Source: Asterias rubens (taxonomy: Eukaryota). Taken from it: a stretch of DNA of 64,000 bases. A model generated the notes under the pieces. That model had not been told where the DNA came from, did not search any database, and saw nothing but the letters and a program-made list of their open reading frames with translations. Position numbers and translations under genes: made by a program. Numbering within the stretch: the stretch's first letter is position 1; each line of letters opens with the position of its first letter. The stretch covers positions 372,001 to 436,000 of the forward strand of contig NC_047074.1 of the NCBI RefSeq assembly GCF_902459465.1, given 5' to 3'. This document shows, piece after piece, positions 13,999 to 53,600 of the stretch.

Positions 13999-14887
13999 AC
14001 TATGTCCATCCCCAACACTTAATTTACTTGGGAAAGATTTCTGTATCCTGCCACCACTTTTTCATTCAATTTTTACCAGAAAGAATATTTCATTTGAACA
14101 AATTTGACACCAATCTATTTCATATTAAGAATGAACAAGTGGTGGCAGGATACAGACATTTTCCCCTTAGTTGTAGCAATTTGTCCGAGGTGCATGCAGT
14201 ACCAACTGCTGTGGTTTCTAAGGTACTGTGAACCGTCTGTCCATTGTTTGTTTTGATAATTTAATACAGTAGGCTTTGGGGGGACTCAAACGAAAATAGC
14301 TAACCCTAGGTGACAACATCAATCAAACTTCCTTTATAATTGGAAATGCTGTAAAATGTTTTCCTTAAAAATTTAATGTTAGTTGGGTTGTGTAAATATT
14401 TCCTCAAGGCATTTTATAACCGATGGTGAACCCCGAGTGTGGGACGTTGTTATAATACTCAACAGACATAGTTTTTTTTTACTCGATGTCATCACCAATG
14501 ATAAGTCTTGGTTGCGCCATTTTGGTGTTGTATTTTTTTTGGTGCACATTTTCAGCGATAATTATTTGCAGTTAAATGAAATTCCACCGAAATGGCAGAC
14601 TATGAGTGCAGTATTGTTACCCTGTGACCTAAAATTCTTAAATACAGAATGTCTTGGTAAGCAGCATTGTACAGCTTAGTAGTTACTGTAGATGATAAGA
14701 AATCGTAATTGACTACAAATATGGTACAATAAGTCACTTTAATCTGAGTCGGATCTGAGAATTCACAAACCATAACTGCCTGCAGCACGGTTCAAATGAT
14801 TTTATTCTCAAAGAGGAAGACATGTGACAAACAATAACTACTCGGACTCCAAACCTAATAGTGTCATAGAGGGCGCTGTTCGTAAAC

Positions 14888-15313
14888 ACTGTAGTGGATG
14901 AGATTGGGTACTGTAGTGGATGAGATTGGGTACTGTAGTGGATGAAAGAGGGTACTGTAGTGGATGAGTTGTAATCTGAAGATCATCTTCTGTAATCCCT
15001 TAGGGTTTCCATAGTGGATGAAAGAGGGTACTGTAGTGGATGAGTTGTAATCTGAAGATCATCTTCTGTATCCCTTAGGGTTTCCATAGTGGATGAAAGA
15101 GGGTACTGTAGTGGATGAGTTGTAATCTGAAGATCATCTTCTGTAATCCCTTAGGGTTTCCATAGTGGATGAAAGAGGGTACTGTAGTGGATGAGTTGTA
15201 ATCTGAAGATCATCTTCTGTAATCCCTTAGGGTTTCCATAGTGGATGAAAGAGGGTACTGTAGTGGATGAGTTGTAATCTGAAGATCATCTTCTGTATCC
15301 CTTAGGGTTTCCA
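14888..15313. repeat. Compound minisatellite: 22-bp unit x2, then 75-76-bp unit x5
   Basis: Unit tagtggatgaaagagggtactgtagtggatgagttgtaatctgaagatcatcttctgtaatcccttagggtttcca starts at 14936, 15012, 15087, 15163 and 15239; copies differ only by a 1-nt indel. Confidence 0.95.
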
Positions 15314-15954
15314 TAATGATTCCAGTATATGATCCTGTAATTAAACAAATAAACAAATACTAATTAATAATTACATCAATATTCATTTACCACGAATACA
15401 ATTAATTTGTACAATTCATAATCATGGACGTTAAACCAATGTTTGTATGAGCAATATTGGCTGTTGCCAGCTTGGTGTTTAAATCCCCTTTAAGGTAGTT
15501 TGCCGAATTTGCCAAGATCACCTTAACAAACAAACAAACAAACAAACAGAGGACAAACCTAGCCCCTTCTGTACAGAGTGACCTTGGACATTCCAGGTCA
15601 TTTCCTAAATTCCTGGTGGTCAAGTTTTATTGTGGAATTTTTGTTACACTAATTATTAAACAGTAGCTGTATCAACAATGTGCAACCTATCACCTTTGAA
15701 TAAATCATCAACTACCAGTAAATTAAATCGCTGTGTTGATTCAAAGTTTGATACATAATGAAACAAACAATGATGAAATTGTTATCACCAAATGTACCAA
15801 ATAGTAAGCCATGTAGCCAAATTAGCCCAATTTAGCATTCAGATTGTTAGTTTTTTCCTTCTTGGGAGTAAAATAAAAAAGACTGTGGTCTCAAAACCAA
15901 AGTGTGGTTAAGAGCCACTATGCCAGAAAAAGATTTGTATTTATTCAATTTTGG

Positions 15955-42501: not shown

Positions 42502-45500
42502 TCAGAGTAAGAGTTTCAAGTCCGGGGCTTGATCGCTGAGTTCCATCCATTCATGAATATGATTCCTATCTCTGCCCATCTGTTTTACTGTCTCATCCAT
42601 ACGTCCATCAAAGAGTCCGAAAAGTCCTCCTGAAGAAAATTCAAAACAAATTCCTTCAATTAAAGATTTGAACACACAAAGACAACACTATTCACTGTTG
42701 AGACACTCTTTTAGAGAGACACCTGTGCATTACACCTCAATATAATTTCTTACCATATTGGTGCCTCCCTCAGGCTTGTGTATACATCTCTTTCTTCCAG
42801 GAGAAATAAGAGACAAATCTAGATGTCTTAGATAGTAACCAGTAGTAACCCCATTCCTCAACTCCTACTCTCCCAGCCTTCTATAGAAACCCCACAAGGG
42901 ACAGCAGTTCTCAAACTAGTCTAAGGGCCATATCACCTGAGGCAATTTACAGGCAACCAGTTCCAGGCAATCTCCGAGAAGAGAATACATTCACATTAGA
43001 CTTTTCTCATATTTTTCCAGGTAATTGCTTGGAAAATTACCCATTGCTGTGCCTCTAAATGGCTGCAAAAGTTGCCTCATATGACAAGGCCTAAAGCCCT
43101 TATGCTGATACCTGAATTGGCAGTTTCGGCTACAGCTATGGCCGTTGCTAAGAGCACCCTGTACTTCAACACATGCTGACACAGCTATCGGCCATACCTC
43201 TAGCCATAGCCGTAGCAGCTATGGCTGTTGCTAAAAGCACCCTGTACTTCAACACATGCTGACACAGCTATCAGCCATAACTCTAGCCATAGCCGTAGCA
43301 GCTATGGCTGTTGCTAAGAGCACCCTGTACTTCAACACATGCTGACACAGCTATCAGCCATAACTCTAGCCATAGCCGTAGCAGCTATGGCTGTTGCTAA
43401 AAGCACCCTGTACTTCAACACATGCTGACACAGCTATCAGCCATAACTCTAGCCATAGCCGTAGCAGCTATGGCTGGTGCTAAGAGCACCTTGTACTTCA
43501 ACACATCCTGACACAGCTATCAGCCATAGCTCTAGCCATAGCCGTAGCTGCCATTTTGGAAAAAGCCCCACAAATTGATTTAACCATCTCACCTGTATGT
43601 ATGAAGAGTATCTTGTTGCCTTTGAATAGTTGTGGTTGTTCCTTTGTTAGCCTGAGTAGATGATGGACGCTCTTACCAGTGTACACAGGTTCAATGATAA
43701 CACCAGTCCTTCTACAAACCTCACCAACAAGATCTAGCAAAAGAAAAACCACAAAATGTCGGAGAAGTTTTAAGATTTAAATGGTTTGGATCATAAGAAA
43801 AACTATAGTAGTAAACTTGCAGGAACAACAATGAATAAAACTACTTTGGGTTGAGAGAAGTGCTGGCTCTGTGAAGGACCGATGTGGTCTCAACGTTTCG
43901 AACAGTATTCTGGAGAGAATTTTGAGTTCATATAGAACTCAATATCAGCAAATATTTGTGGATTTAAAAAATTGTACAAATTAGTTTGAACTCTTATAAC
44001 CGCCGCCTCATCAGAGCTTACTGATCAAAACTTTAGTTGTTGGTTTTTAAAACCAACACTACTCAAAAAGAAATATTCACATGGTGTTACTGCAAACCTC
44101 TTAGCTAATACCATTTATTTAAATGTATAAAAAGACTTCTTTCAATGACTTCATTCTATTCTTGTTTTCTTATTTACCCAGTTCCTCTTGAGTTGACAGT
44201 CCGTAGCCTCTTCCTTTGACTCCATCTATTAAGTGGACAATATCTTCAGACTGCAGGACTTTACCATTGCTATCCTTCACATCGATTTCCCTCAAGACAT
44301 CGTTGATCTGTTTAGAGTGGAACTCTGAGTCATCCGAGACGATGAAGCCATGGACTCTGTAAGAAACATTTTAATTTTCATATTCAGACAAGCATATGAA
44401 GCAGTTTGAGCCTACATTTGCTCTACACTGATTTATGCTAAAGCACCTCAGGTTGGGCATGAACCTACAACCTTCATATTCAACTGTTAATAGGAACTTT
44501 CTCAACACCCTAAGAGTATTTATAAACCTCTCAGCTCAGAGCTACTATCTCAAACCTTTACAACCTCCATTGATACTCCTTGGAGAAGAGAAGCAATTAA
44601 GGCCAGATGCCTTTCTTTATTAGCTGATCTAAAGATAGGTCTGTCATATCACAATGACTGCTGCTGGGTTGCACTTACTTCAGTCTGGAGCCAGTGAGAT
44701 AGTTGGCAAGAGCCAGACCAGCAGTAGAACCACTGCTTCCACATGCAATGGCGATGTCTGTAAACTGGTCTGCAATACCCTAGGTCAAATTAAACCATAA
44801 CCAAAATGATTGATTGTAAACAAGCTGTACGTATGTTGAACGCGTATAGTAGAATATATCTAAACTATTTGATTCAAACTGCCTCTGACTACTGGGCAAG
44901 CTCAGTGGTCTAGTGGGAAGACGCTATTTTAGCATGGTAAATGGCAAAAAAGGATTTCTCAAAAAAGTGAACAAACAACAAATCTGAATAGTTCTTGTAA
45001 AGCTTAAAAAAAGAAAGTGGTTTTGTAATGACTATGACCACAAAAACTAACTAGGCACAGCAAAGTATTGTTGAACAGAACAGTTTACCAGCCAAAATGA
45101 CATTAAGTTTGCATTGTTGGGACTGGTTCCCCACTGCTTTACAAAGAAATGTGTCGAGCAGCATTTTCTGTTTAACATTTTTTATGACATTGGGCCCTAG
45201 TCAGCATTGGTTGTTTGGCTTTGTTTACCGAGTACCCTAATCAAATATATGCTAGGCATGGGTTTATGGGATGTGGGGTAATTGTGGGGTAATTGTGGGG
45301 TTATTGCAGGGTTATTAAAATGAGATCCTCACCTGATCCAGTAGTTCCCTGAATCCCTCCAGATAGCCGTATAAACCTATTGCTGTAGAGCCACCTATTG
45401 GTATTGGGTAGGCACTCTCACCCGTCTCCTCTCTGTATAGAAATCAACATTACTGGGTCACTAAAACTGGATCAATACTAAAAGTGGGTCAGTACTACAA

Positions 45501-48500
45501 CTTTTTCAGTTCTCAAACTTAAGCTTCATCAGTACCATAAACTGGGTCGGTACTAAAACTGGGTCAAAATAAAACTGGGTCAGTACTATAAAATCGGGTC
45601 AGTACTAAAACTGGGTCACTAAGTGGCAAAAGCCATACCGCGTAATTTTTCCTGATTACATAGTTCGAACAAATTAACACACATTTCCGACAACATTAAA
45701 GTTACAAAAAGAGACTGTCGCCACCTAGTGCCCAGAACATTTCACATACAGAAGGAGTTCAAAAGCAATATAGAGTGTTGAAAACTTACTTTATTTTCTG
45801 TACCAGTTGATCCATACGTGGTTTTATATCTGTTGAATATTGAGACTTCTTAGGTAGCAGATAAACATGTGTTCCAATTAGACGGTTCAGGAACATATTA
45901 GCTGTACAAACAACTTCATTTGGATCCTGCATAGAATTGAGTTCAGTAAACATATTTTAATCAATTGGTTGACCATCTTGTTTGTCTTCCATTCAATTAA
46001 ATGTAACTCAAACTGAGGCTGGCAGGAAAAATAAGTCTGGTCCCATTATAAAATGAGAATAAAGACTTTCCCTGTCACCATGAGGGTAGGGAACCAGACC
46101 ACATCGGGATAAAGGTCAACTTAAAAAAGCTGGTACAGTTGATTCAAAGAACGTTCAGTGCATTTGAACTTACTGAGACGGGAGATCTAAGTAGAAGGTA
46201 GGGTTCCAGACCAAGCTGTCTTGTTGCTATGGCAGTAGCTCGACAATGATTTGATTGTGATGATCCACATGTGATGACGGAGGTACAGCCTTGATTTATG
46301 GCGTCGGCAAGGAGGAACTCAAGCTTACGAGCCTGTGTGGAGAATTGTGGAGAATAAATAGAATAACTCTTGGAGGAAAAGAAAATTAAGACACTTAGAT
46401 GAGCCATTCGATGAACTTTGTAATATACCAGTATCAAATGTCTTGAGAAATAGTTGTGAAAAACTCCCCCCCCCCCCCAATTTAAGTTTTACTTTTGTTT
46501 ATTGTGCCAATTCGTAAAGCAAAAGCACAGTGTACCACGGCAATTCCTGTGGGTGCTGTGGGTTATTTTGAGGCCTGCATTCTTGAGTTTTGTTAAGATA
46601 ACTAAATTTCAACATCCATGTTAGAAATCAATTACTGTGACAACAAATCTTTCAGTGTCATCAAATTTCCTCACCTTGTTACCAGAAAGTTCACATCCTG
46701 TCAGGTCATCTCGTTTAATGTGGATTTCAAAATTGGCTGGAACGTTGGGAAGGTACCATCTCTGAATAGGGGTGACTCCATGGATGAGCTATAAATAATA
46801 ATAACAAAAAGAGAATTTGGAAATGTTTGTCAAAGGAAATAATTATTGTTTAACCCAAGAAACAGAATACCATTGAGGCAATCCCCTAATGACCTATTAA
46901 GCCATTTCTTCAAAGTGCAATGACCTTGGGGAGTCATACTTGATATCCTAGATTACTCCACATATTGATGACCGCATTTCATGTAAATAATGTATTGGTA
47001 CACCAGGGCCCTTCAGATTTATAGTTTGTTTCCCAATTATTTTACAATATCAAACTTCAAGTGTTGTTTGAAACTTTGAATAGTGTGGATAATAAGAAGT
47101 AACTATTTGTCAAACTTGCCAGTTACACCCTAATACAACCATGAGTGGGAAGTCTTTATGGCAGCACTTCAAACAGTATACTCTGCTCATCTTCAGCAAA
47201 AAGTATAGTTTGATTAATGTTGACATATTTTACAAAATGACACAGCTGACACTTGATTTTGTGTATTTTCTTCAGCCAGTATTGAAACTTAAGAGATAAT
47301 CACCTTCTCGAGAGACATCTGTTCAACTTGTCAGACAGACTGACCTCCAGTGACCCGACCCTGACACCAAATACCCAGACAGTTATGGCCACACATTATC
47401 ATATTATAATCTATGAACAAAGTGTGGGTCAACAGCTATCACAGTTATTATTTGCACACAGTTTTGTGCACAATTCTGGATATTTTCTCCTTTGTTGAAT
47501 TGACTTAAGTTTCCCTACAGTACTTGATCAGGCTGTGAACATCGTTCTTGCTTGAATGGGCACAGCAATTTCCCTCTGTTAAGGGGCACTTCTATTGGGA
47601 AAATGTAAGCCTGTATTGGAACCTTGCAGATAGAGGGTACCACAGCAAAAGCACAGGACACTTCGGCAATTGAGTGGGTGCCGTGGGTTACTTTGAGACT
47701 GCTTTTATATATTGAGAGAATCTTAGACAAACTTTTCCCTATTTCATCCTAAGTGCTTGACATAAAATGATGACCATCCAGTGGCAATTGCACACAAAAG
47801 GCTATGCACATTGTACATTATATAGGTGGAATTTTAAATTTCTTAAGAATTCCGTGGGATATATTTCCAAGGAATGTGTTTTGTGTGAAAACTAAAAGGA
47901 ATCCACATGCCAGACCAGAGCCAAGCTGAGTATACACAGCTAGCTGCGTCTACATCATAGCTCTGGATAGTACAACCACAAAGCACAGCACAGCATGACC
48001 TGGGCTGGTCTTGCATCATTCAAAAACCTGGCAAGAATTTAACTATAGCTCTGTCTGTTTGATATGGTACTCGGGTACCTGATAATGGCTAGGGTCAAGC
48101 CGTGTCCTTTGTAGTCTAATATTACACACCATGGGTAAATACTCCAATGTCAAACAATCGTCGTGAACAAATAGATACTTTGCACATTGAGAGGTAGGCA
48201 TAACAGGTTTTTTCCTGGTTTATCTTGGTTCCAAGAAAAGAACTAACTGCCTTGTACAAACTACTAATATAAACTTATCTTACTTTTAAAAAGTTGGTGA
48301 TCTTCACTCATTTTTGTAAAGTGTTCCTAAATGAAGGCTTTGTATGGTTTCTGACTGGTACCCCAAACAAGACAAATAGGGAAACCTCCAGTTAGGGGTA
48401 CCCGGTACAATAGCTCACTAGGTAGAGCACTGGAATGTTGATTCAGCAGTCGTAGGTTCAAATCCCACTCTAGTAAATTTGTCTTTGTTCAACCCAAATT

Positions 48501-49032
48501 AGTGAAAATTTACCCAGTTGCAGTTTCCCTTTTATAGTGAGTTATAAGCATTCTATTTTGAGGGTAATAAAAACTTATAAAGACGAAATAAAGCTCTTTC
48601 TGAATAAACTTCACTTACCTTTACTCTGTACTTTGGAATAAGTTGAAGTTGTTTCATCCAATCAGCAGGATGATATTGCAATAAGAAATCTGAGGGTACC
48701 GGACCGTCGCAAGACGCTTCTCCGCCTCCATTCTCTATCAATGCAGTCCGTTTTATCATCTCTGTTTCCATTGCTGGTGAAGGATTCTTAAATGAACTCT
48801 CCTTCCGATGATGAAATCTCGTAACTGTGAATTGGCGACTGCACTGCACCCAGGTACCAAGATTCAAGATATAATGTGAACTACACGTGCCTTTTCTATT
48901 CAATGACTGTTTGCAAATACTCCATGGCCATGAGCTTAATGCATGGCCTGAAGGAATAGATCCTTGACATGGTGCCCAGTAACAACTGAATAGGTTCTTT
49001 ATCTGAACAAATGATACCAGGGATCTAGCCAT
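42502..49032 (-). CDS. D-cysteine desulfhydrase-like PLP enzyme, paralogue A (ACC deaminase/D-Cys desulfhydrase family), about 490 aa with N-terminal extension
   Basis: Exons 48619-49032, 46675-46788, 46174-46332, 45790-45926, 45333-45432, 44679-44779, 44178-44356, 43593-43733, 42502-42629; 1473 nt in frame. Motifs [26 protein letters not shown] (PLP lysine), [47 protein letters not shown]. Start ACCATGG at 49030-49032; second in-frame ATG at 48769-48771. Upstream acceptor at 49215-49216 and a candidate 5' UTR donor at 50233-50237. Confidence 0.93.
43134..43548. repeat. 83-bp minisatellite x5 in the last intron of desulfhydrase A
   Basis: Unit agctatggctgttgctaa(a/g)agcaccctgtacttcaacacatgctgacacagctatcagccataactctagccatagccgtagc starts at 43134, 43217, 43300, 43383 and 43466. 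Confidence 0.95.
45453..45621. repeat. Degenerate 17-bp tandem repeat
   Basis: Recurrent tactaaaactgggtcag in desulfhydrase A intron 4; an 11-bp gtggggtaatt x4 run lies nearby at 45272-45315. Confidence 0.75.
48400..48500 (+). mobile_element. tRNA-headed SINE fragment
   Basis: A-box-like tagctcactaggtagagc and B-box ggttcaaatcc, followed by a shared tail (ctctagt.aattt.tcttt.tt.aa.cc.aa). Related fragments at about 1781-1860, 6455-6535, 10234-10325 (-), 21531-21587 (-), 44896-44940 and 53020-53100. Confidence 0.6.
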
Positions 49033-49393
49033 GGTGTTAAGGTCAAATTCAGGTCAAGTCAAGCCTGGCCTGAGGATGTGTGCATTATTAGTAGACACAG
49101 TGCCAATGAAATTACGCCCCCTGAGAATAGCTAGGGTACAATGTGCAGGTGTGCAGTGAGTCAACATCCGAAGCTAGCTCCATCTGTATAATTTGGACGT
49201 CCATAAAGTGTCACCTAGGAATAAAATGAACACTAACACACATTTTTATATCCTTCCCTAAACTGCAGATGTTACAGCCAGTGTTTGTACTTTGGTTGTG
49301 TCACTGTTTTTTACTAGACTTGAATGAGAAACCAGTTCCCCTTCCTTTTGTCTGGGGGCGAATTTGTCAGGGAGCGAGTTTGCTAGGGGGCCT

Positions 49394-49559
49394 GCAGCCG
49401 ATTTCACGAAACGCTAGGATTAATCCTAACTTGAGTTAGGACGAGTAACCTCTCCTAACTTAGGATGGGTTCAATGCGTCCTAACGAATTTGGATACGGA
49501 TCTGAACCCGTCCTAAGATTAATACTAAGTTAGGAAGAGTTTGTGAAATCGACGGCTGC
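49394..49559. mobile_element. MITE in the 5' UTR intron of desulfhydrase A
   Basis: gcagccgatttcacgaa ... ttgtgaaatcgacggctgc termini, with internal inverted tcctaac/gttagga repeats. Confidence 0.7.
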
Positions 49560-50434
49560 CCCACGTACTCCTAGAACTACGAGGTTTGATCCGCTATCGT
49601 CTCCACGATAGCGGAACGAACCTCATAGTTCCATTCTTCCTCTCAATGATTTTTTTTTTTTGATGCATGCATGCTGCGTCAACAATGATGAGATTGAGAT
49701 TATTCATTGTATAATTTTGTATTATGTTCAACATTTCTTTTTTGTTGTATGTATTGTTTTTTTGTTCTGCGCCTCGGAATAGGGTCTTGTACACTAGATA
49801 GATGGCGCATTATAAATGCATTATTATTATTATTATTATTATACAATCATGGAGGATTTTTACTAATAATACTGCAGTGTAACTGTACTTATTATTATTA
49901 ACAATATAATGCAGTGAGTAGTGTGGTTGGGCTACATGGATTGAGCTAGTAAAATAGTAGTCTAGTAGTAGTAATAGTATGGTGGTATTAAGTGGGCTAT
50001 TGTTAAATATAACAAGTAGAAGTAGTTAAAGTTTATAGTTAAATGTTTAATGGATGAAAGAATGTCGATCAAAATCTCATCAATGCTGGTGCTATGCTGT
50101 GCTACACTGAATGATGTAATGCTATACCTACAGCCCATGTAGAACATGATCAGCTCTGGCCATGCTCCCCTCAGCCTGAAAGTAGATTTGTTGTGATGTG
50201 ACACAGAAACAAATCTACTTCAAAACAAAATAATTACCACCGTTAAACCAGCATAGCGCCCTCATTTTTGTGTTGGTGCAATAATTAAAAACACAGTCCA
50301 CATGTCATGCATGCCAACCATAGAGCTCTATGATGCCAACACGAATAAATACGTCTGAAGATCATTTACTATAATCATGTAGTATGTACATGACTAAGCA
50401 GTGGACTGGTTAAGTTTACGGACGGTACTATCTA

Positions 50435-50628
50435 TAGACTTGTGGACAAGTCGTTAAATCGGCCCCACGCGCTGAGATAGTGGTCTCGCGAGATCACTGC
50501 TCTCGCGCGAACTGATGGCTCCCCCGGCCCCGATTTCGACTCCTCATTAACGAGGAGTCGAAATCGGGGAGCCATCAGTTCGCGCGAGAGCAGTGATCTC
50601 GCGATTTAACGACTTGTCCACAAGTCTC
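50435..50628. mobile_element. Foldback MITE, 194 bp, with a 9-bp TSD (Mutator-like by TSD length)
   Basis: Perfect inverted arms 50436-50461/50602-50627 (26 bp), 50486-50524/50566-50604 (39 bp) and 50528-50545/50552-50569 (18 bp), with a 6-nt loop. Flanked by the direct repeat TACTATCTA at 50426-50434 and 50629-50637. The superfamily assignment is inference. Confidence 0.85.
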
Positions 50629-50682
50629 TACTATCTACTGCATGATGAGAGTTGACTTGATCTTGGAAGGTAGACGTCCAAG

Positions 50683-53600
50683 ATGAGTGCCAATAAACAG
50701 CGATTAAATGAGTCTTTAATCAACTATGACCCGCCTGAATGGGTTAGCAAGCTGGATAATCTACCCAAACATCATGTACAGGTTGGTGTTTTATTTAGTT
50801 TAGATTTTGTGGACCTTAAAACCATTTATTTAATTCGATCATGGAGGTAGAAATTTTGCAAAACTGCTGAATAAACAGATCGGATCTCACTGGGTGTCCT
50901 ATGGACATGGTTGGAAAAATATTTATCGATTTGTTTAGATAGATAGTTTGGCGCAGTTCTGTACCTTTCACCATAGACCATGACCATATGAACACCTGCG
51001 AACCTGCTGCACTAAAAAATTAATATTTATGAATTGATATAAATATGATCAACTTGCATTCACCTTTTTAAATTAAAGGCAGTGGACACTATTGGTAATT
51101 ACTCAAAATAGTTATCATCATAAAACCTTACTTGATTACGAGTAATGTAATGGGGAGAGGTTGATGGCATAAAACATTGTGAGAGACAGCTCCCTCTGAA
51201 GTGACGTAGTTTCCGAGAAAGAAGTAATTTCCCACGAATTTGATTTGAGACCTCAAGTTTAGAATTTGACGTCTCGAAATCAACCATCTAAACGAATACA
51301 ACTTCGTGTGTCAAGGGTGTTTTTTTTCTTCATTGTTATCTCAAATTTTCTCAGAGGTTTATTTGTTATTTTATGCATATGTTTATATACACTAAGTGAG
51401 AAGACTGGTCTTTGACAATTACCATTAGTGTCCAGTGTCTTTAAAATTATAAAGCATACTCTTTCTCATACAAAAGAGTGAAACCTTTGATGTACTGCAA
51501 TTTTTCTTTTTTGATAGCTTGTCCATCCAGACACCCCTATTCATCGATGGTATGTCCCAGGCGTTCCTGAAGATTTTGAGTTGTATATTAAACGCGACGA
51601 TATGACAGGCTCACAGCTTTCAGGAAATAAGGTAAAGCCCACAAAATCACACGGATGCTAGAGAGGCAAAGGTCTCTGCCATGGCTTTCGAAAGTTGCCG
51701 GTTAACTTTGTAAAGATTTTCCAATGGAAGTGCCTTTTCTAAAATGAATAAGGACTTGCCCTTTCAAAGATGAAATCCTATGATTCAGTATGCAGCGAGT
51801 GGTGGGTGTGGCCTTTATTTAACTTAAACTCAAATTGACGTTTTAGAGGTGTGTTGATGTAAACTTTTCCCATGATGCAGTTGCAAAAAAATGCTGAAGA
51901 ATTGCTTAATTGAGGGGGAATGTGAGGAGCCAAGTTATTGTTGAAAAGAAATAAAGATTTTGTTCTAAACTTTGAAAACCAAATTGTGGAGTTTAAAGTT
52001 ATACTTAAATTTTCAATCAGGTACGGAAACTGGAGTTCTTGCTCGCTGATGCCATCTCAAAAGGATGTTCAACGATCATTACTTGTGGTGGTATTCAATC
52101 AAACCACAGCAGAGCTACAACCATCTCAGGTCATCAACTTGGACTCAAAACTCATCTTCTTCTCAAGAGTACAGAACTGGTACGTGTCAAGCAAGAATAC
52201 AAATAAGTAGGTTTTGAAACTTTCATGGTGCGAGTATAATTAGGTGAGATTTGTGGTAGCACAATGTGTAAATCTCTTCTGAGTTGGTTCTGAAAAGAAT
52301 CGGTGGTTGACAGCTCAATGTTATGATGAGTATGCTCTGATCGTCTTCATCATCCTGGCTTGCCTGTGTCAATGTGTCTTTTTTTTTTCCAGGACCCAGA
52401 GAAGGCAACTTGCAAAGGGAATGTCTTATTGGATCGTCTTGTAGGAACCCACATTCATCTGATTCCTGGAGATGCAGTTTATAATGAAGACATCCATCAA
52501 AGGATGGAAAACTTCAAGAAGAAAATTAGGTAAAACAAACAAAGTGTATTATCTGATTTGGTCTGGGGAATTGTGAAAAAAACCCAGGCTGTATCCATTG
52601 ATATCCTCCTTCTTTTTCAAGCCTGGAAACTCAGCAAACTTACCCCCCCCCCTCCCATCCTTCTCATCTCCTCGCCCCCTTTGCAGAAATGTTTGCAAGA
52701 AAATAGTACACAAACTCATACTTTCAGGGTTTGCCCATTCAGTGACTGGTCAAAGGACCAGTTCTTAGCCTTCCATCTTACTAGTCCGTCACCTTTTGCA
52801 CTGGTTCAAAGCCAGCAGACAACTGTTAATCTCAAACAGTTGTTTGTATTTTCCTCCAGTGAAGAGAAAGGTGAGAAGGCATATTCCATTCCATGTGGAG
52901 GGACCAACTCAATTGGACTCTTTGGCTACGTTCAAACATTCCAAGAGCTCCTTAAACAGGTACTAGCTTTATTTAAACTGTCTCTAGCCAACGGGCAATC
53001 TCAGTGGTATATGTTGTAAGATACTGCTCTAGAATTGCAAAGGTTGTTGTTTGAATCCCACTTAAGTAATATACCTGTGATTATTTTGTAGAACTCAGGA
53101 CATCTGTGTATGGTAAAATCCAAATGATAAGGTACTAGCTTGATTTAACGGCGCATGGTTTGGGCAAAATATGTGATCGTCTGAGTTAATGGGAATTTAA
53201 TTTATTTTGTAATTACGAAAAACTTGTTAAAGTTACTTCCTTTTTTTTATAGAAAGTCCCGGATAATTTCACAGACATTGCTGTTGCAGTTGGTAGTGGA
53301 GGAACGATTGGAGGACTAAGCATGTCTAACTATCTCAGCAACTCTCATCTTAGGTAAATTTTTGTAAAGAAGAAGCATGCAACCTTTTAGCTCATCAGGG
53401 CCCAATTTCATAGCTCTGCTTACCGCCGATTTCTACATTTGCAGGGCAAGCATTGAATTCTGCGCTCACTGTGTAAGTGAAATTGCCTTGTAACGTGGAA
53501 GATGCACTTACACAAGCAAACATTTCCTGATAACTTGTGAAATATGATGAGCAGAGTCATAAAACTAGTCCCAGGAGATAATTTGTTTTCTTGAATACTA

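What the first reader, a model, noticed from the sequence alone, without database searches (positions are those of the whole stretch)
48772..49032. Paralogue A carries an 87-aa mitochondrial-presequence-like extension that paralogue B lacks, plus a second in-frame start
Seen: the reading frame stays open for 87 codons upstream of METEM..., starting at an optimal ACCATGG. The extension has 10 Lys/Arg, one acidic residue (E78), many Ser and hydrophobic residues, and an R-Q-F|T stretch resembling an R-3 processing site. The downstream ATG (48769-48771) also has a good context (GCAATGG). Paralogue B starts directly at the region homologous to the mature enzyme (MSANKQRLNESLINYDPPEW vs ...[11 protein letters not shown]). 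Established: plant D-Cys desulfhydrase is mitochondrial, and sulfide is oxidised in mitochondria by SQOR. Inference: the paralogues are partitioned between mitochondrion (A) and cytosol (B), and A may be dual-targeted by leaky scanning.
Basis: partly seen in the sequence, partly recalled or inferred. Interest (0 to 1): 0.72.

Follow-up and report, generated by a model that had tools for sequence, protein, structure and literature searches.

The report
Transcribed N-terminal leader on starfish desulfhydrase paralogue
One of two head-to-head D-cysteine-desulfhydrase-type genes in the starfish Asterias rubens has a real, transcribed 87-codon N-terminal extension that public annotation already lists; it may send the enzyme to mitochondria, but that is untested and this is an ordinary gene design.

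Summary
On the minus strand, an ATG in ACCATGG context (49032) opens 87 codons in frame with a second ATG (48771, GCAATGG). My 9-exon model gives 490 aa. It is identical to a 490-aa RefSeq protein of Asterias rubens, and a 403-aa RefSeq isoform starts at the second ATG. Paralogue B (380 aa) lacks the extension.

The extension is very probably coding.
- RNA-derived contigs from four studies run unbroken through it, to about 30 nt below a conserved TATA box.
- Against A. amurensis its dN/dS is about 0.21.
- Patiria and Acanthaster keep an open 111- and 123-codon leader in the same exon.

The mitochondrial reading is plausible but only moderately supported.
- For: the leader has no acidic residue until E78, is predicted disordered, and carries an R-Q-F|T pattern. 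Many homologues, including plant enzymes called mitochondrial, share "acid-free leader plus internal Met".
- Against: its 10 Lys/Arg equal what random translation gives, only 2 lie in the first 40 residues, and amphipathicity is not above shuffles.

Leaky scanning is unlikely, because the first ATG has an optimal context and four out-of-frame ATGs intervene. Separate transcripts are the likelier source of the short form. Verdict: a new member of a known kind, of low-to-moderate interest. The scan has not reported it on other DNA.

The parts
48772..49032 (-). 87-codon N-terminal extension of paralogue A (residues 1-87 of the 490-aa isoform)
   Evidence: The ORF is open. It is identical to RefSeq protein P0271. 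RNA contigs of 4 runs cover it without a break. dN/dS against A. amurensis is 0.21. AlphaFold2 pLDDT is below 50 with no secondary structure. It has no Pfam or NCBIfam match and is single copy in the genome.
49029..49035 (-). First start codon in ACCATGG context (ATG at 49032-49030)
   Evidence: The context is identical in A. amurensis.
48768..48774 (-). Second in-frame start (METEM) in GCAATGG context (ATG at 48771-48769); start of the 403-aa isoform
   Evidence: P0270. An 'ME' start sits at the same place in Patiria (MERDT) and Acanthaster (MESEA).
48826..48837 (-). R66-Q67-F68-T69, a pattern resembling an R-3 type processing site
   Evidence: Read from the sequence. It reads R-Q-F-S in A. 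amurensis. The pattern has low specificity and cleavage is not shown.
48925..48972 (-). Four out-of-frame ATGs inside the extension (48970, 48944, 48931, 48925), opening short ORFs of 2-24 codons
   Evidence: Three of the four are kept in A. amurensis. They argue against leaky scanning to ATG2.
49033..49232 (-). 5' leader of the long transcript, with upstream ATGs at 49205, 49183, 49167 and 49086
   Evidence: RNA contigs end at 49172, 49212, 49214 and 49232 in the four runs. The upstream ATGs and their short ORFs come from the frame translations and the sequence.
49243..49250 (-). TATAAAAA box about 20-30 nt upstream of the 5' ends of the RNA contigs
   Evidence: Sequence. It is identical in A. 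amurensis. Promoter function is inferred.
48619..48771 (-). Rest of coding exon 1 (residues 88-138) with the conserved Y-H-P-A-D-W motif; GTAAGT donor follows at 48618
   Evidence: Its only changes against A. amurensis are 3 synonymous ones.
42505..46788 (-). Exons 2-9 of paralogue A: 46675-46788, 46174-46332, 45790-45926, 45333-45432, 44679-44779, 44178-44356, 43593-43733, 42505-42629
   Evidence: Splice sites and phases are shared exon by exon with paralogue B. PALP domain PF00291 matches.
50683..50781 (+). Exon 1 of paralogue B, which has no extension (MSANKQ...)
   Evidence: RNA contigs are spliced 50779>51516 and 51629>52019.

Best explanation
The 87 codons are a genuine, translated N-terminal leader of paralogue A of a D-cysteine-desulfhydrase/ACC-deaminase-type PLP enzyme in Asterias rubens. 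A TATA-driven transcript starts near 49220 and carries ATG1. It encodes a 490-aa precursor whose first ~110 residues are disordered and whose first 77 residues contain no acidic residue.

The most likely role of the leader is a long, fast-evolving mitochondrial presequence. It would be removed by the processing peptidase, possibly around R66-Q67-F68|T69. The 403-aa form from ATG2 would stay in the cytosol. That short form is more likely made from separate transcripts (an internal start site or a variant 5' exon) than by leaky scanning.

Shown: the ORF, its transcription, its coding constraint, and its conservation as an open leader in starfish. Inferred: translation from ATG1, import, the cleavage site, and the origin of the short form.
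For: - Model identity: the 490-aa model equals RefSeq isoform P0271. A 403-aa isoform P0270 also exists for the same gene. A. amurensis has the same pair, at 488 and 401 aa.
- Transcription: contigs of four runs from four studies run unbroken from 48642 to 49172-49232. These runs hold spliced mRNA, as the introns of B are removed. No joint inside the extension is listed. The intron 1 bins 47701-48300 are empty or near zero in the four runs.
- Promoter: a TATAAAAA box at 49250-49243 is conserved in A. amurensis.
- Coding constraint within Asterias: there are 14 substitutions in 261 nt, 8 of them at third positions. dN/dS is 0.21, with binomial P about 0.003. The one polymorphism seen in RNA (48901) is synonymous.
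- Conservation in other starfish: Patiria and Acanthaster have open leaders of 111 and 123 codons in the same exon, ahead of a conserved 'ME' start. The two leaders are homologous to each other (z = 18), with only in-frame gaps and dN/dS of 0.62.
- Acid-free leaders: the first D/E is at residue 78 in Asterias, 59 in Patiria and 75 in Acanthaster. For Asterias this has P = 0.009 against random translation.
- Structure: residues 1-110 have pLDDT below 50, and residues 1-85 have no predicted secondary structure.
- Family pattern: 47 of 105 close homologues have at least 28 residues before the Y-x-P-P-x-W motif. Of these, 44 have an internal Met and 34 have an acid-free first 20 residues. They include textbook-looking leaders in Branchiostoma and Saccoglossus, and the Solanum enzymes.
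- Literature: plant D-cysteine desulfhydrase is described as mitochondrial (PMC10585658).
Against: - No localisation predictor could be run, and there is no experiment.
- The Asterias leader is not Arg-rich. It has R = 1 and net charge +2 in its first 40 residues. Its K+R total equals the random expectation.
- Its hydrophobic moment is not above shuffles (P = 0.36 for an 11-residue window, 0.85 for 18). No helix is predicted.
- It contains 5 Cys and 4 Trp, which is unusual for a presequence. At 87 residues it is long.
- Sequence similarity to the Patiria or Acanthaster leaders is not significant (P = 0.064 and 0.45).
- The long mRNA has 3-4 upstream ATGs, so the efficiency of ATG1 is unknown.
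- RefSeq's pipeline may simply have taken the longest ORF, so the annotation is not independent proof of translation. The Acanthaster B model shows how such leaders can arise in annotation.
Confidence: 0.5

Rival explanations
1. The extension is translated but is not a mitochondrial presequence. It could be another kind of disordered N-terminal tail, such as a regulatory or degron region, a membrane- or ER-associated leader, or a lineage-specific appendage with little function.
For: The features are weakly canonical: low Arg, no amphipathic signal and many Cys and Trp. Selection on the amino-acid sequence is relaxed between Patiria and Acanthaster (dN/dS 0.62). The region is predicted disordered. 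In Patiria and Acanthaster, alternative first exons replace the distal part of the leader with unrelated peptides.
Against: Acidic residues are excluded from the first 59-78 residues in all three genera, which is a hallmark of targeting peptides. Homologues in other phyla carry short, classical-looking presequences at the same place. The hydrophobic run of the leader is broken by Q10, K12 and N13, so it is a poor signal peptide or anchor (read from the sequence). The C-terminus (..DLKLLL) shows no peroxisomal signal.
Confidence: 0.2
2. The extension is not translated to any useful extent. The true start is ATG2 (METEM), and the upstream frame is part of a long, ATG-rich 5' leader. That frame would be open partly by chance and was extended by longest-ORF annotation.
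For: The leader of the long transcript holds upstream ATGs at 49205, 49183, 49167 and 49086. Open stretches of 87 or more codons are common in this AT-rich window, with about 65 in six frames. The K+R content equals random translation. The third paralogue and B work without a leader. The extension has no homologue outside Asterias by sequence.
Against: dN/dS is 0.21, with an excess of third-position changes in frame 0. The frame is kept open in the same exon in three genera, with only in-frame gaps despite dS of about 0.9. ATG1 has the best context of all ATGs in the leader. Four out-of-frame ATGs would hinder access to ATG2 on the long mRNA, which is the form seen in RNA. Acidic residues are depleted.
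Confidence: 0.17
3. This is the reader's mechanism: one mRNA yields both forms by leaky scanning past ATG1 to ATG2. A variant has reinitiation after the short upstream ORFs.
For: The two in-frame ATGs both have good context, and ATG2 is conserved. Only the long transcript form was visible in RNA contigs. Two upstream ORFs end 21-24 nt before ATG1, so reinitiating ribosomes might skip it (inference).
Against: ATG1 has the optimal A at -3 and G at +4. Four out-of-frame ATGs lie between the two starts, one of them in a gccATGG context. Patiria and Acanthaster also have 3-4 intervening ATGs. RefSeq models the short form as a separate product. In Patiria and Acanthaster, alternative 5' exons splice into the leader.
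Confidence: 0.08

Closest known systems
Plant D-cysteine desulfhydrase (Arabidopsis At1g48420, DCDES1, and Solanum/Capsicum DCD)
   Same: It belongs to the same enzyme family (hits). The Solanum and Capsicum hits also have a ~40-residue acid-free, Ser-rich, Lys-based leader with Cys and Trp, followed by an internal Met-Glu-Asp start. The plant enzyme (Arabidopsis, Capsicum) is described as mitochondrial (PMC10585658).
   Different: The leader sequences are unrelated. The Asterias leader is twice as long. No localisation data exist for any animal member, and I found no paper on echinoderm members.
Orthologous long isoforms of Patiria miniata (517 aa, P0275) and Acanthaster planci (528 aa, P0274)
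   Same: They share the head-to-head synteny with a B-type paralogue. The leader sits in the same exon ahead of a conserved 'ME' start. The leaders are acid-free, and short isoforms are annotated as well.
   Different: Their leaders are longer (111 and 123 residues) and more Arg-rich at the tip (MARSWLLIGWLRLKP.. type). Both genes also have an alternative upstream first exon that splices into the leader. Similarity to the Asterias leader is not significant.
Genes that give mitochondrial and cytosolic isoforms from two in-frame starts (a general class known from my own knowledge, for example fumarase- or aminoacyl-tRNA-synthetase-type cases)
   Same: There are two in-frame ATGs. The upstream one adds an acid-free leader, and the downstream one begins the catalytic protein.
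   Different: Here ATG1 is in optimal context with intervening ATGs, so the classical leaky-scanning version does not fit. Alternative transcripts are more likely. Localisation is untested.

Membership tests
D-cysteine desulfhydrase / ACC deaminase family (fold-type II PLP enzymes) | PALP domain (PF00291) above the gathering score | tested here: met
   A scores 95.4 bits and B 110.7 bits against a cut-off of 35.
D-cysteine desulfhydrase / ACC deaminase family (fold-type II PLP enzymes) | TIGR01275 (ACC_deam_rel subfamily) at or above the curated cut-off | tested here: not met
   Paralogue A scores 270.3, just below the 289.4 cut-off. Paralogue B scores 310.8 and passes. The best solved relatives are ACC deaminase 1j0a and D-cysteine desulfhydrases 7ysk and 4d8t, at E 1e-40 to 1e-46.
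D-cysteine desulfhydrase / ACC deaminase family (fold-type II PLP enzymes) | PLP-binding Lys in the S-G-N-K-x-R-K-L-E motif | tested here: met
   G174, N175, K176 and R178 are invariant across 28 homologues.
D-cysteine desulfhydrase / ACC deaminase family (fold-type II PLP enzymes) | D-Cys to H2S (or ACC deaminase, or sulfo-lyase) activity | not testable with these tools
   This needs an enzyme assay. The NCBIfam equivalog models for all three activities score far below their cut-offs.
Mitochondrial matrix-targeting presequence | Lies at the extreme N-terminus of a translated, transcribed ORF, outside the folded domain | tested here: met
   It is present in RNA contigs. The frame is under constraint. 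pLDDT is below 50 for residues 1-110, and the catalytic fold starts near residue 131. Translation itself is not shown.
Mitochondrial matrix-targeting presequence | Lack of acidic residues | tested here: met
   The first D/E is at residue 78. This has P = 0.009 against random translation of this genome.
Mitochondrial matrix-targeting presequence | Enrichment of Arg and positive charge near the N-terminus | tested here: not met
   There are 2 positive charges and 1 Arg in the first 40 residues. The total K+R of 10 compares with 9.8 expected by chance. The Patiria and Acanthaster leaders do better, with 6 and 4 positive charges in the first 40.
Mitochondrial matrix-targeting presequence | Amphipathic helix | tested here: inconclusive
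   The maximum hydrophobic moment is 0.53 (11-residue window, residues 1-11), similar to homologues but not above shuffles (P = 0.36). No helix is predicted in residues 1-85.
Mitochondrial matrix-targeting presequence | Processing-peptidase motif (Arg at -2 or -3) | tested here: inconclusive
   R-Q-F|T is at residues 66-69, and reads R-Q-F|S in A. amurensis. The pattern is short and common.
Mitochondrial matrix-targeting presequence | Import into mitochondria; score from a trained predictor | not testable with these tools
Dual isoforms by leaky scanning | Weak context at the first AUG and no AUG between the two starts | tested here: not met
   ATG1 is in ACCATGG, and four out-of-frame ATGs intervene.

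The most novel reading that the evidence does not exclude
The design of an acid-free leader plus a conserved internal Met may be ancestral to this enzyme family. It is seen in cephalochordates, hemichordates, echinoderms, molluscs and plants. It would split a D-cysteine-desulfhydrase-type H2S source between mitochondria and cytosol. In starfish the leader would have grown to 87-123 fast-evolving residues, and the choice of start would be set by alternative 5' ends and upstream ORFs. That would point to a mitochondrial D-Cys/H2S pathway in invertebrate deuterostomes that vertebrates lack.
Probability: 0.35. Interest if true: 0.45.

Novelty: new member of a known kind. Interest (0 to 1): 0.25.

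Why it matters
If the long form is mitochondrial, starfish and many other invertebrates would make H2S, or process D-cysteine-like substrates, inside mitochondria with an enzyme family that vertebrates do not have. The three Asterias paralogues would then divide the work by compartment. This would be a useful detail for comparative sulfur and H2S biology. It is not a surprise, however. Alternative N-termini that add a targeting peptide are common, and both isoforms are already in public annotation. The main value of this check lies in three results: the leader is coding and transcribed, the leaky-scanning idea does not fit, and the "10 Lys/Arg" argument carries no weight in this AT-rich genome.

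Tried and rejected
- Searches for relatives of the leader. A full-length query scored on residues 1-90, and a profile of four starfish N-termini, found only Asterias itself. The profile search also returned one metagenome DNA contig of A. rubens whose gene call reads through the TGA. No intermediate-distance species was therefore available.
- The leader DNA has no second copy in the genome, so it does not derive from a repeat.
- Pfam and NCBIfam find nothing in residues 1-87.
- Asterias against Patiria or Acanthaster leaders: the shared 'MARS' start and 'APCQ' looked like homology, but a shuffle test gave P = 0.064 and 0.45. I do not claim sequence homology, only positional orthology.
- The hydrophobic-moment test did not separate the leader from shuffles.
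- ARAGORN found no tRNA in the tRNA-like piece of intron 1.
- Logan contigs cannot show transcript starts or rare splice forms, so the origin of the 403-aa isoform could not be seen. The look-up of sequencing runs was busy three times before it answered.
- A paper search for the enzyme in echinoderms or other invertebrates returned nothing relevant.

Full report
**What is there**

The window is from Asterias rubens. My spliced models are identical to three RefSeq proteins of that species.

Paralogue A lies on the minus strand in 9 exons:
- 48619-49032
- 46675-46788
- 46174-46332
- 45790-45926
- 45333-45432
- 44679-44779
- 44178-44356
- 43593-43733
- 42505-42629

All have GT/AG borders, and their phases match paralogue B exon by exon. 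Paralogue B lies head-to-head on the plus strand (ATG at 50683, 380 aa).

A encodes 490 aa from ATG1 (49032, aacaccATGG) or 403 aa from ATG2 (48771, ccagcaATGG). Both forms are already RefSeq isoforms (P0271 and P0270). A. amurensis has the same pair, at 488 and 401 aa. Both proteins carry the PALP domain. Their nearest solved relatives are ACC deaminase and D-cysteine desulfhydrases, and the catalytic fold starts near residue 131 of the long form.

**Is it more than chance?**

On its own the case is only moderate.
- A fixed 87-codon opening has P of about 0.005-0.017.
- The window contains about 65 open stretches of that length in six frames.
- The K+R count of 10 is exactly what random translation of this AT-rich DNA gives (mean 9.8).
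- The lack of acidic residues is unusual: P = 0.03 for at most one, and P = 0.009 for a first acidic residue at position 78 or later.

**Evidence that the frame is coding**

1. *RNA.* I laid four runs from four studies on 46101-52100. They hold spliced mRNA, because B's introns are removed with GT..AG joints at 50779>51516 and 51629>52019. In every run one unbroken contig spans 48642 through the whole extension and ATG1, ending at 49172, 49212, 49214 or 49232. No listed joint falls inside the extension, and the intron 1 bins 47701-48300 are empty or near zero in the four runs. A TATAAAAA box sits at 49250-49243, about 20-30 nt above those ends, and is identical in A. amurensis. Contigs can hide rare forms, so this is not proof of absence.

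2. *Selection within Asterias.* Against A. amurensis the extension has 14 substitutions in 261 nt. Eight are at third codon positions. That gives 7.5 synonymous and 6.5 non-synonymous changes, dN/dS = 0.21, and a binomial P of about 0.003 against the neutral share. The only polymorphism seen in RNA (48901) is synonymous. Flanking non-coding DNA differs by 3-4%.

3. *Other starfish.* In Patiria miniata and Acanthaster planci the head-to-head synteny is kept. The long isoforms (517 and 528 aa) have leaders of 111 and 123 codons. These are open in the same exon as a conserved 'ME' start (MERDT, MESEA). The two leaders are homologous to each other (local score z = 18), with only in-frame gaps and dN/dS of 0.62 at dS of about 0.9. 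The frame is therefore maintained while the residues drift. The Asterias leader is not significantly similar to them (P = 0.064 and 0.45), so I claim positional orthology only.

**Is it a mitochondrial presequence?**

For:
- Acidic residues are excluded from the first 78, 59 and 75 residues in Asterias, Patiria and Acanthaster.
- AlphaFold2 gives pLDDT below 50 for residues 1-110 and no secondary structure in 1-85, so this is a tail and not a domain.
- Among 105 close homologues with a recognisable Y-x-P-P-x-W motif, 47 have at least 28 residues before it. Of those, 44 have an internal Met within 40 residues of the motif, and 34 have an acid-free first 20 residues (some isoform redundancy).
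- These homologues include classical-looking leaders in Branchiostoma (MRSWRAAGRLFHRA-M..) and Saccoglossus (MRLISSVLILARRPLTT..-M..). They also include the Solanum enzymes, whose 40-residue Ser-, Lys- and Cys-containing leader precedes 'MEDSSS'.
- The literature treats the plant enzyme as mitochondrial (PMC10585658).

Against:
- The Asterias leader has one Arg and two positive charges in its first 40 residues.
- Its best 11-residue hydrophobic moment (0.53) is matched by 36% of shuffles.
- It is rich in Cys and Trp, and it is long.
- I could not run any trained predictor.

I put mitochondrial import of the long form at roughly one in two.

**How the two forms arise**

Leaky scanning does not fit. 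ATG1 has the best context of any ATG in the leader. Four out-of-frame ATGs (48970, 48944, 48931, 48925) lie before ATG2. Patiria and Acanthaster also have 3-4 intervening ATGs. RefSeq lists the short form as a separate product. In Patiria and Acanthaster, alternative upstream first exons splice into acceptors inside the leader.

The long Asterias mRNA also has upstream ATGs at 49205, 49183, 49167 and 49086. Two of their short ORFs end 21-24 nt before ATG1. Reinitiation effects are therefore possible, but this is speculative.

**Limits on the 'A mitochondrial, B cytosolic' picture**

- A third paralogue on another chromosome (P0277, 86% identical to A) starts at 'METTK'. It has an in-frame stop 9 codons upstream, and it has no DNA similarity to the leader.
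- The Acanthaster B-orthologue model (445 aa) has a 66-residue basic leader of its own. That leader overlaps A's alternative first exon antisense, and it may be a longest-ORF artefact.

**Verdict**

The extension is a real, transcribed and constrained coding leader that public annotation already holds. The mitochondrial reading is plausible by family analogy and acid depletion, but it is unproven and weakly canonical in Asterias. Leaky scanning is unlikely. This is a new member of a known kind, of low-to-moderate interest.

Noticed in passing
G000:C2:18065342-18065473 (locus L006:1501-1632): A third, A-like paralogue (RefSeq 392 aa, P0277, 86% identical to A) lies on another chromosome. It starts at METTK, has an in-frame stop 9 codons upstream, and has no leader. 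DNA similarity to A begins only at about window 48714.
   Followed up: partly
window 50901-51500: A repeat inside intron 1 of paralogue B has summed contig depth of 1e5 to 9e5 in all four RNA-derived runs. Many internal joints and loose ends map at 51069-51073 and 51445. It is a very abundant, apparently expressed repeat family.
   Followed up: no
window 49385-49790 and 50301-50700: High-copy repeats lie between the two genes, at depths of hundreds to 7e4. They include the inverted-repeat element seen at 49400-49560, and a recurrent 147-149 nt skip at 50454/50456>50604. The RNA 5' ends of A (~49220) and B (50611-50673) are about 1.4 kb apart, so the promoter is not tightly shared.
   Followed up: partly
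window 48400-48470 (intron 1 of A): A tRNA-like stretch (..gggatttgaacc..) has raised RNA-contig depth (35-548 in bin 48301-48500). ARAGORN calls no tRNA there, so it is probably a tRNA-derived SINE fragment.
   Followed up: partly
window 43109-43575 (intron 8 of A) and 14737-15359: Both are tandem repeats. The first has a period of about 83 nt and copies 85-100% alike at the translated level. The second is an array near 15 kb with a period of about 76 nt.
   Followed up: no
L004:3743-4048 (minus) versus L004:4001-4120 (plus), Acanthaster planci: The B-orthologue model (445 aa) has a 66-residue basic N-terminal leader. Its coding DNA overlaps, antisense, the alternative first coding exon of the A orthologue. 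One or both may be longest-ORF artefacts.
   Followed up: partly
window 46174-46332 and NCBIfam scores: Paralogue A falls just below the TIGR01275 cut-off (270 against 289 bits) while B passes (311). A has G-S-S-Q-S-N-H where B and most homologues have G-G-x-Q-S-N-H.
   Followed up: no
window, paralogue B: RefSeq also lists a 350-aa B isoform (P0279) that starts 'MDS' joined to exon 2. B therefore has an alternative first exon too.
   Followed up: no
L005 (ENA metagenome contig, 1551 nt): This is a contig of A. rubens DNA inside a metagenome assembly. Its gene call reads through the TGA 7 codons upstream of ATG1. The contig also has a 5-nt deletion just after the exon 1 donor that keeps GTAAGT.
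   Followed up: yes
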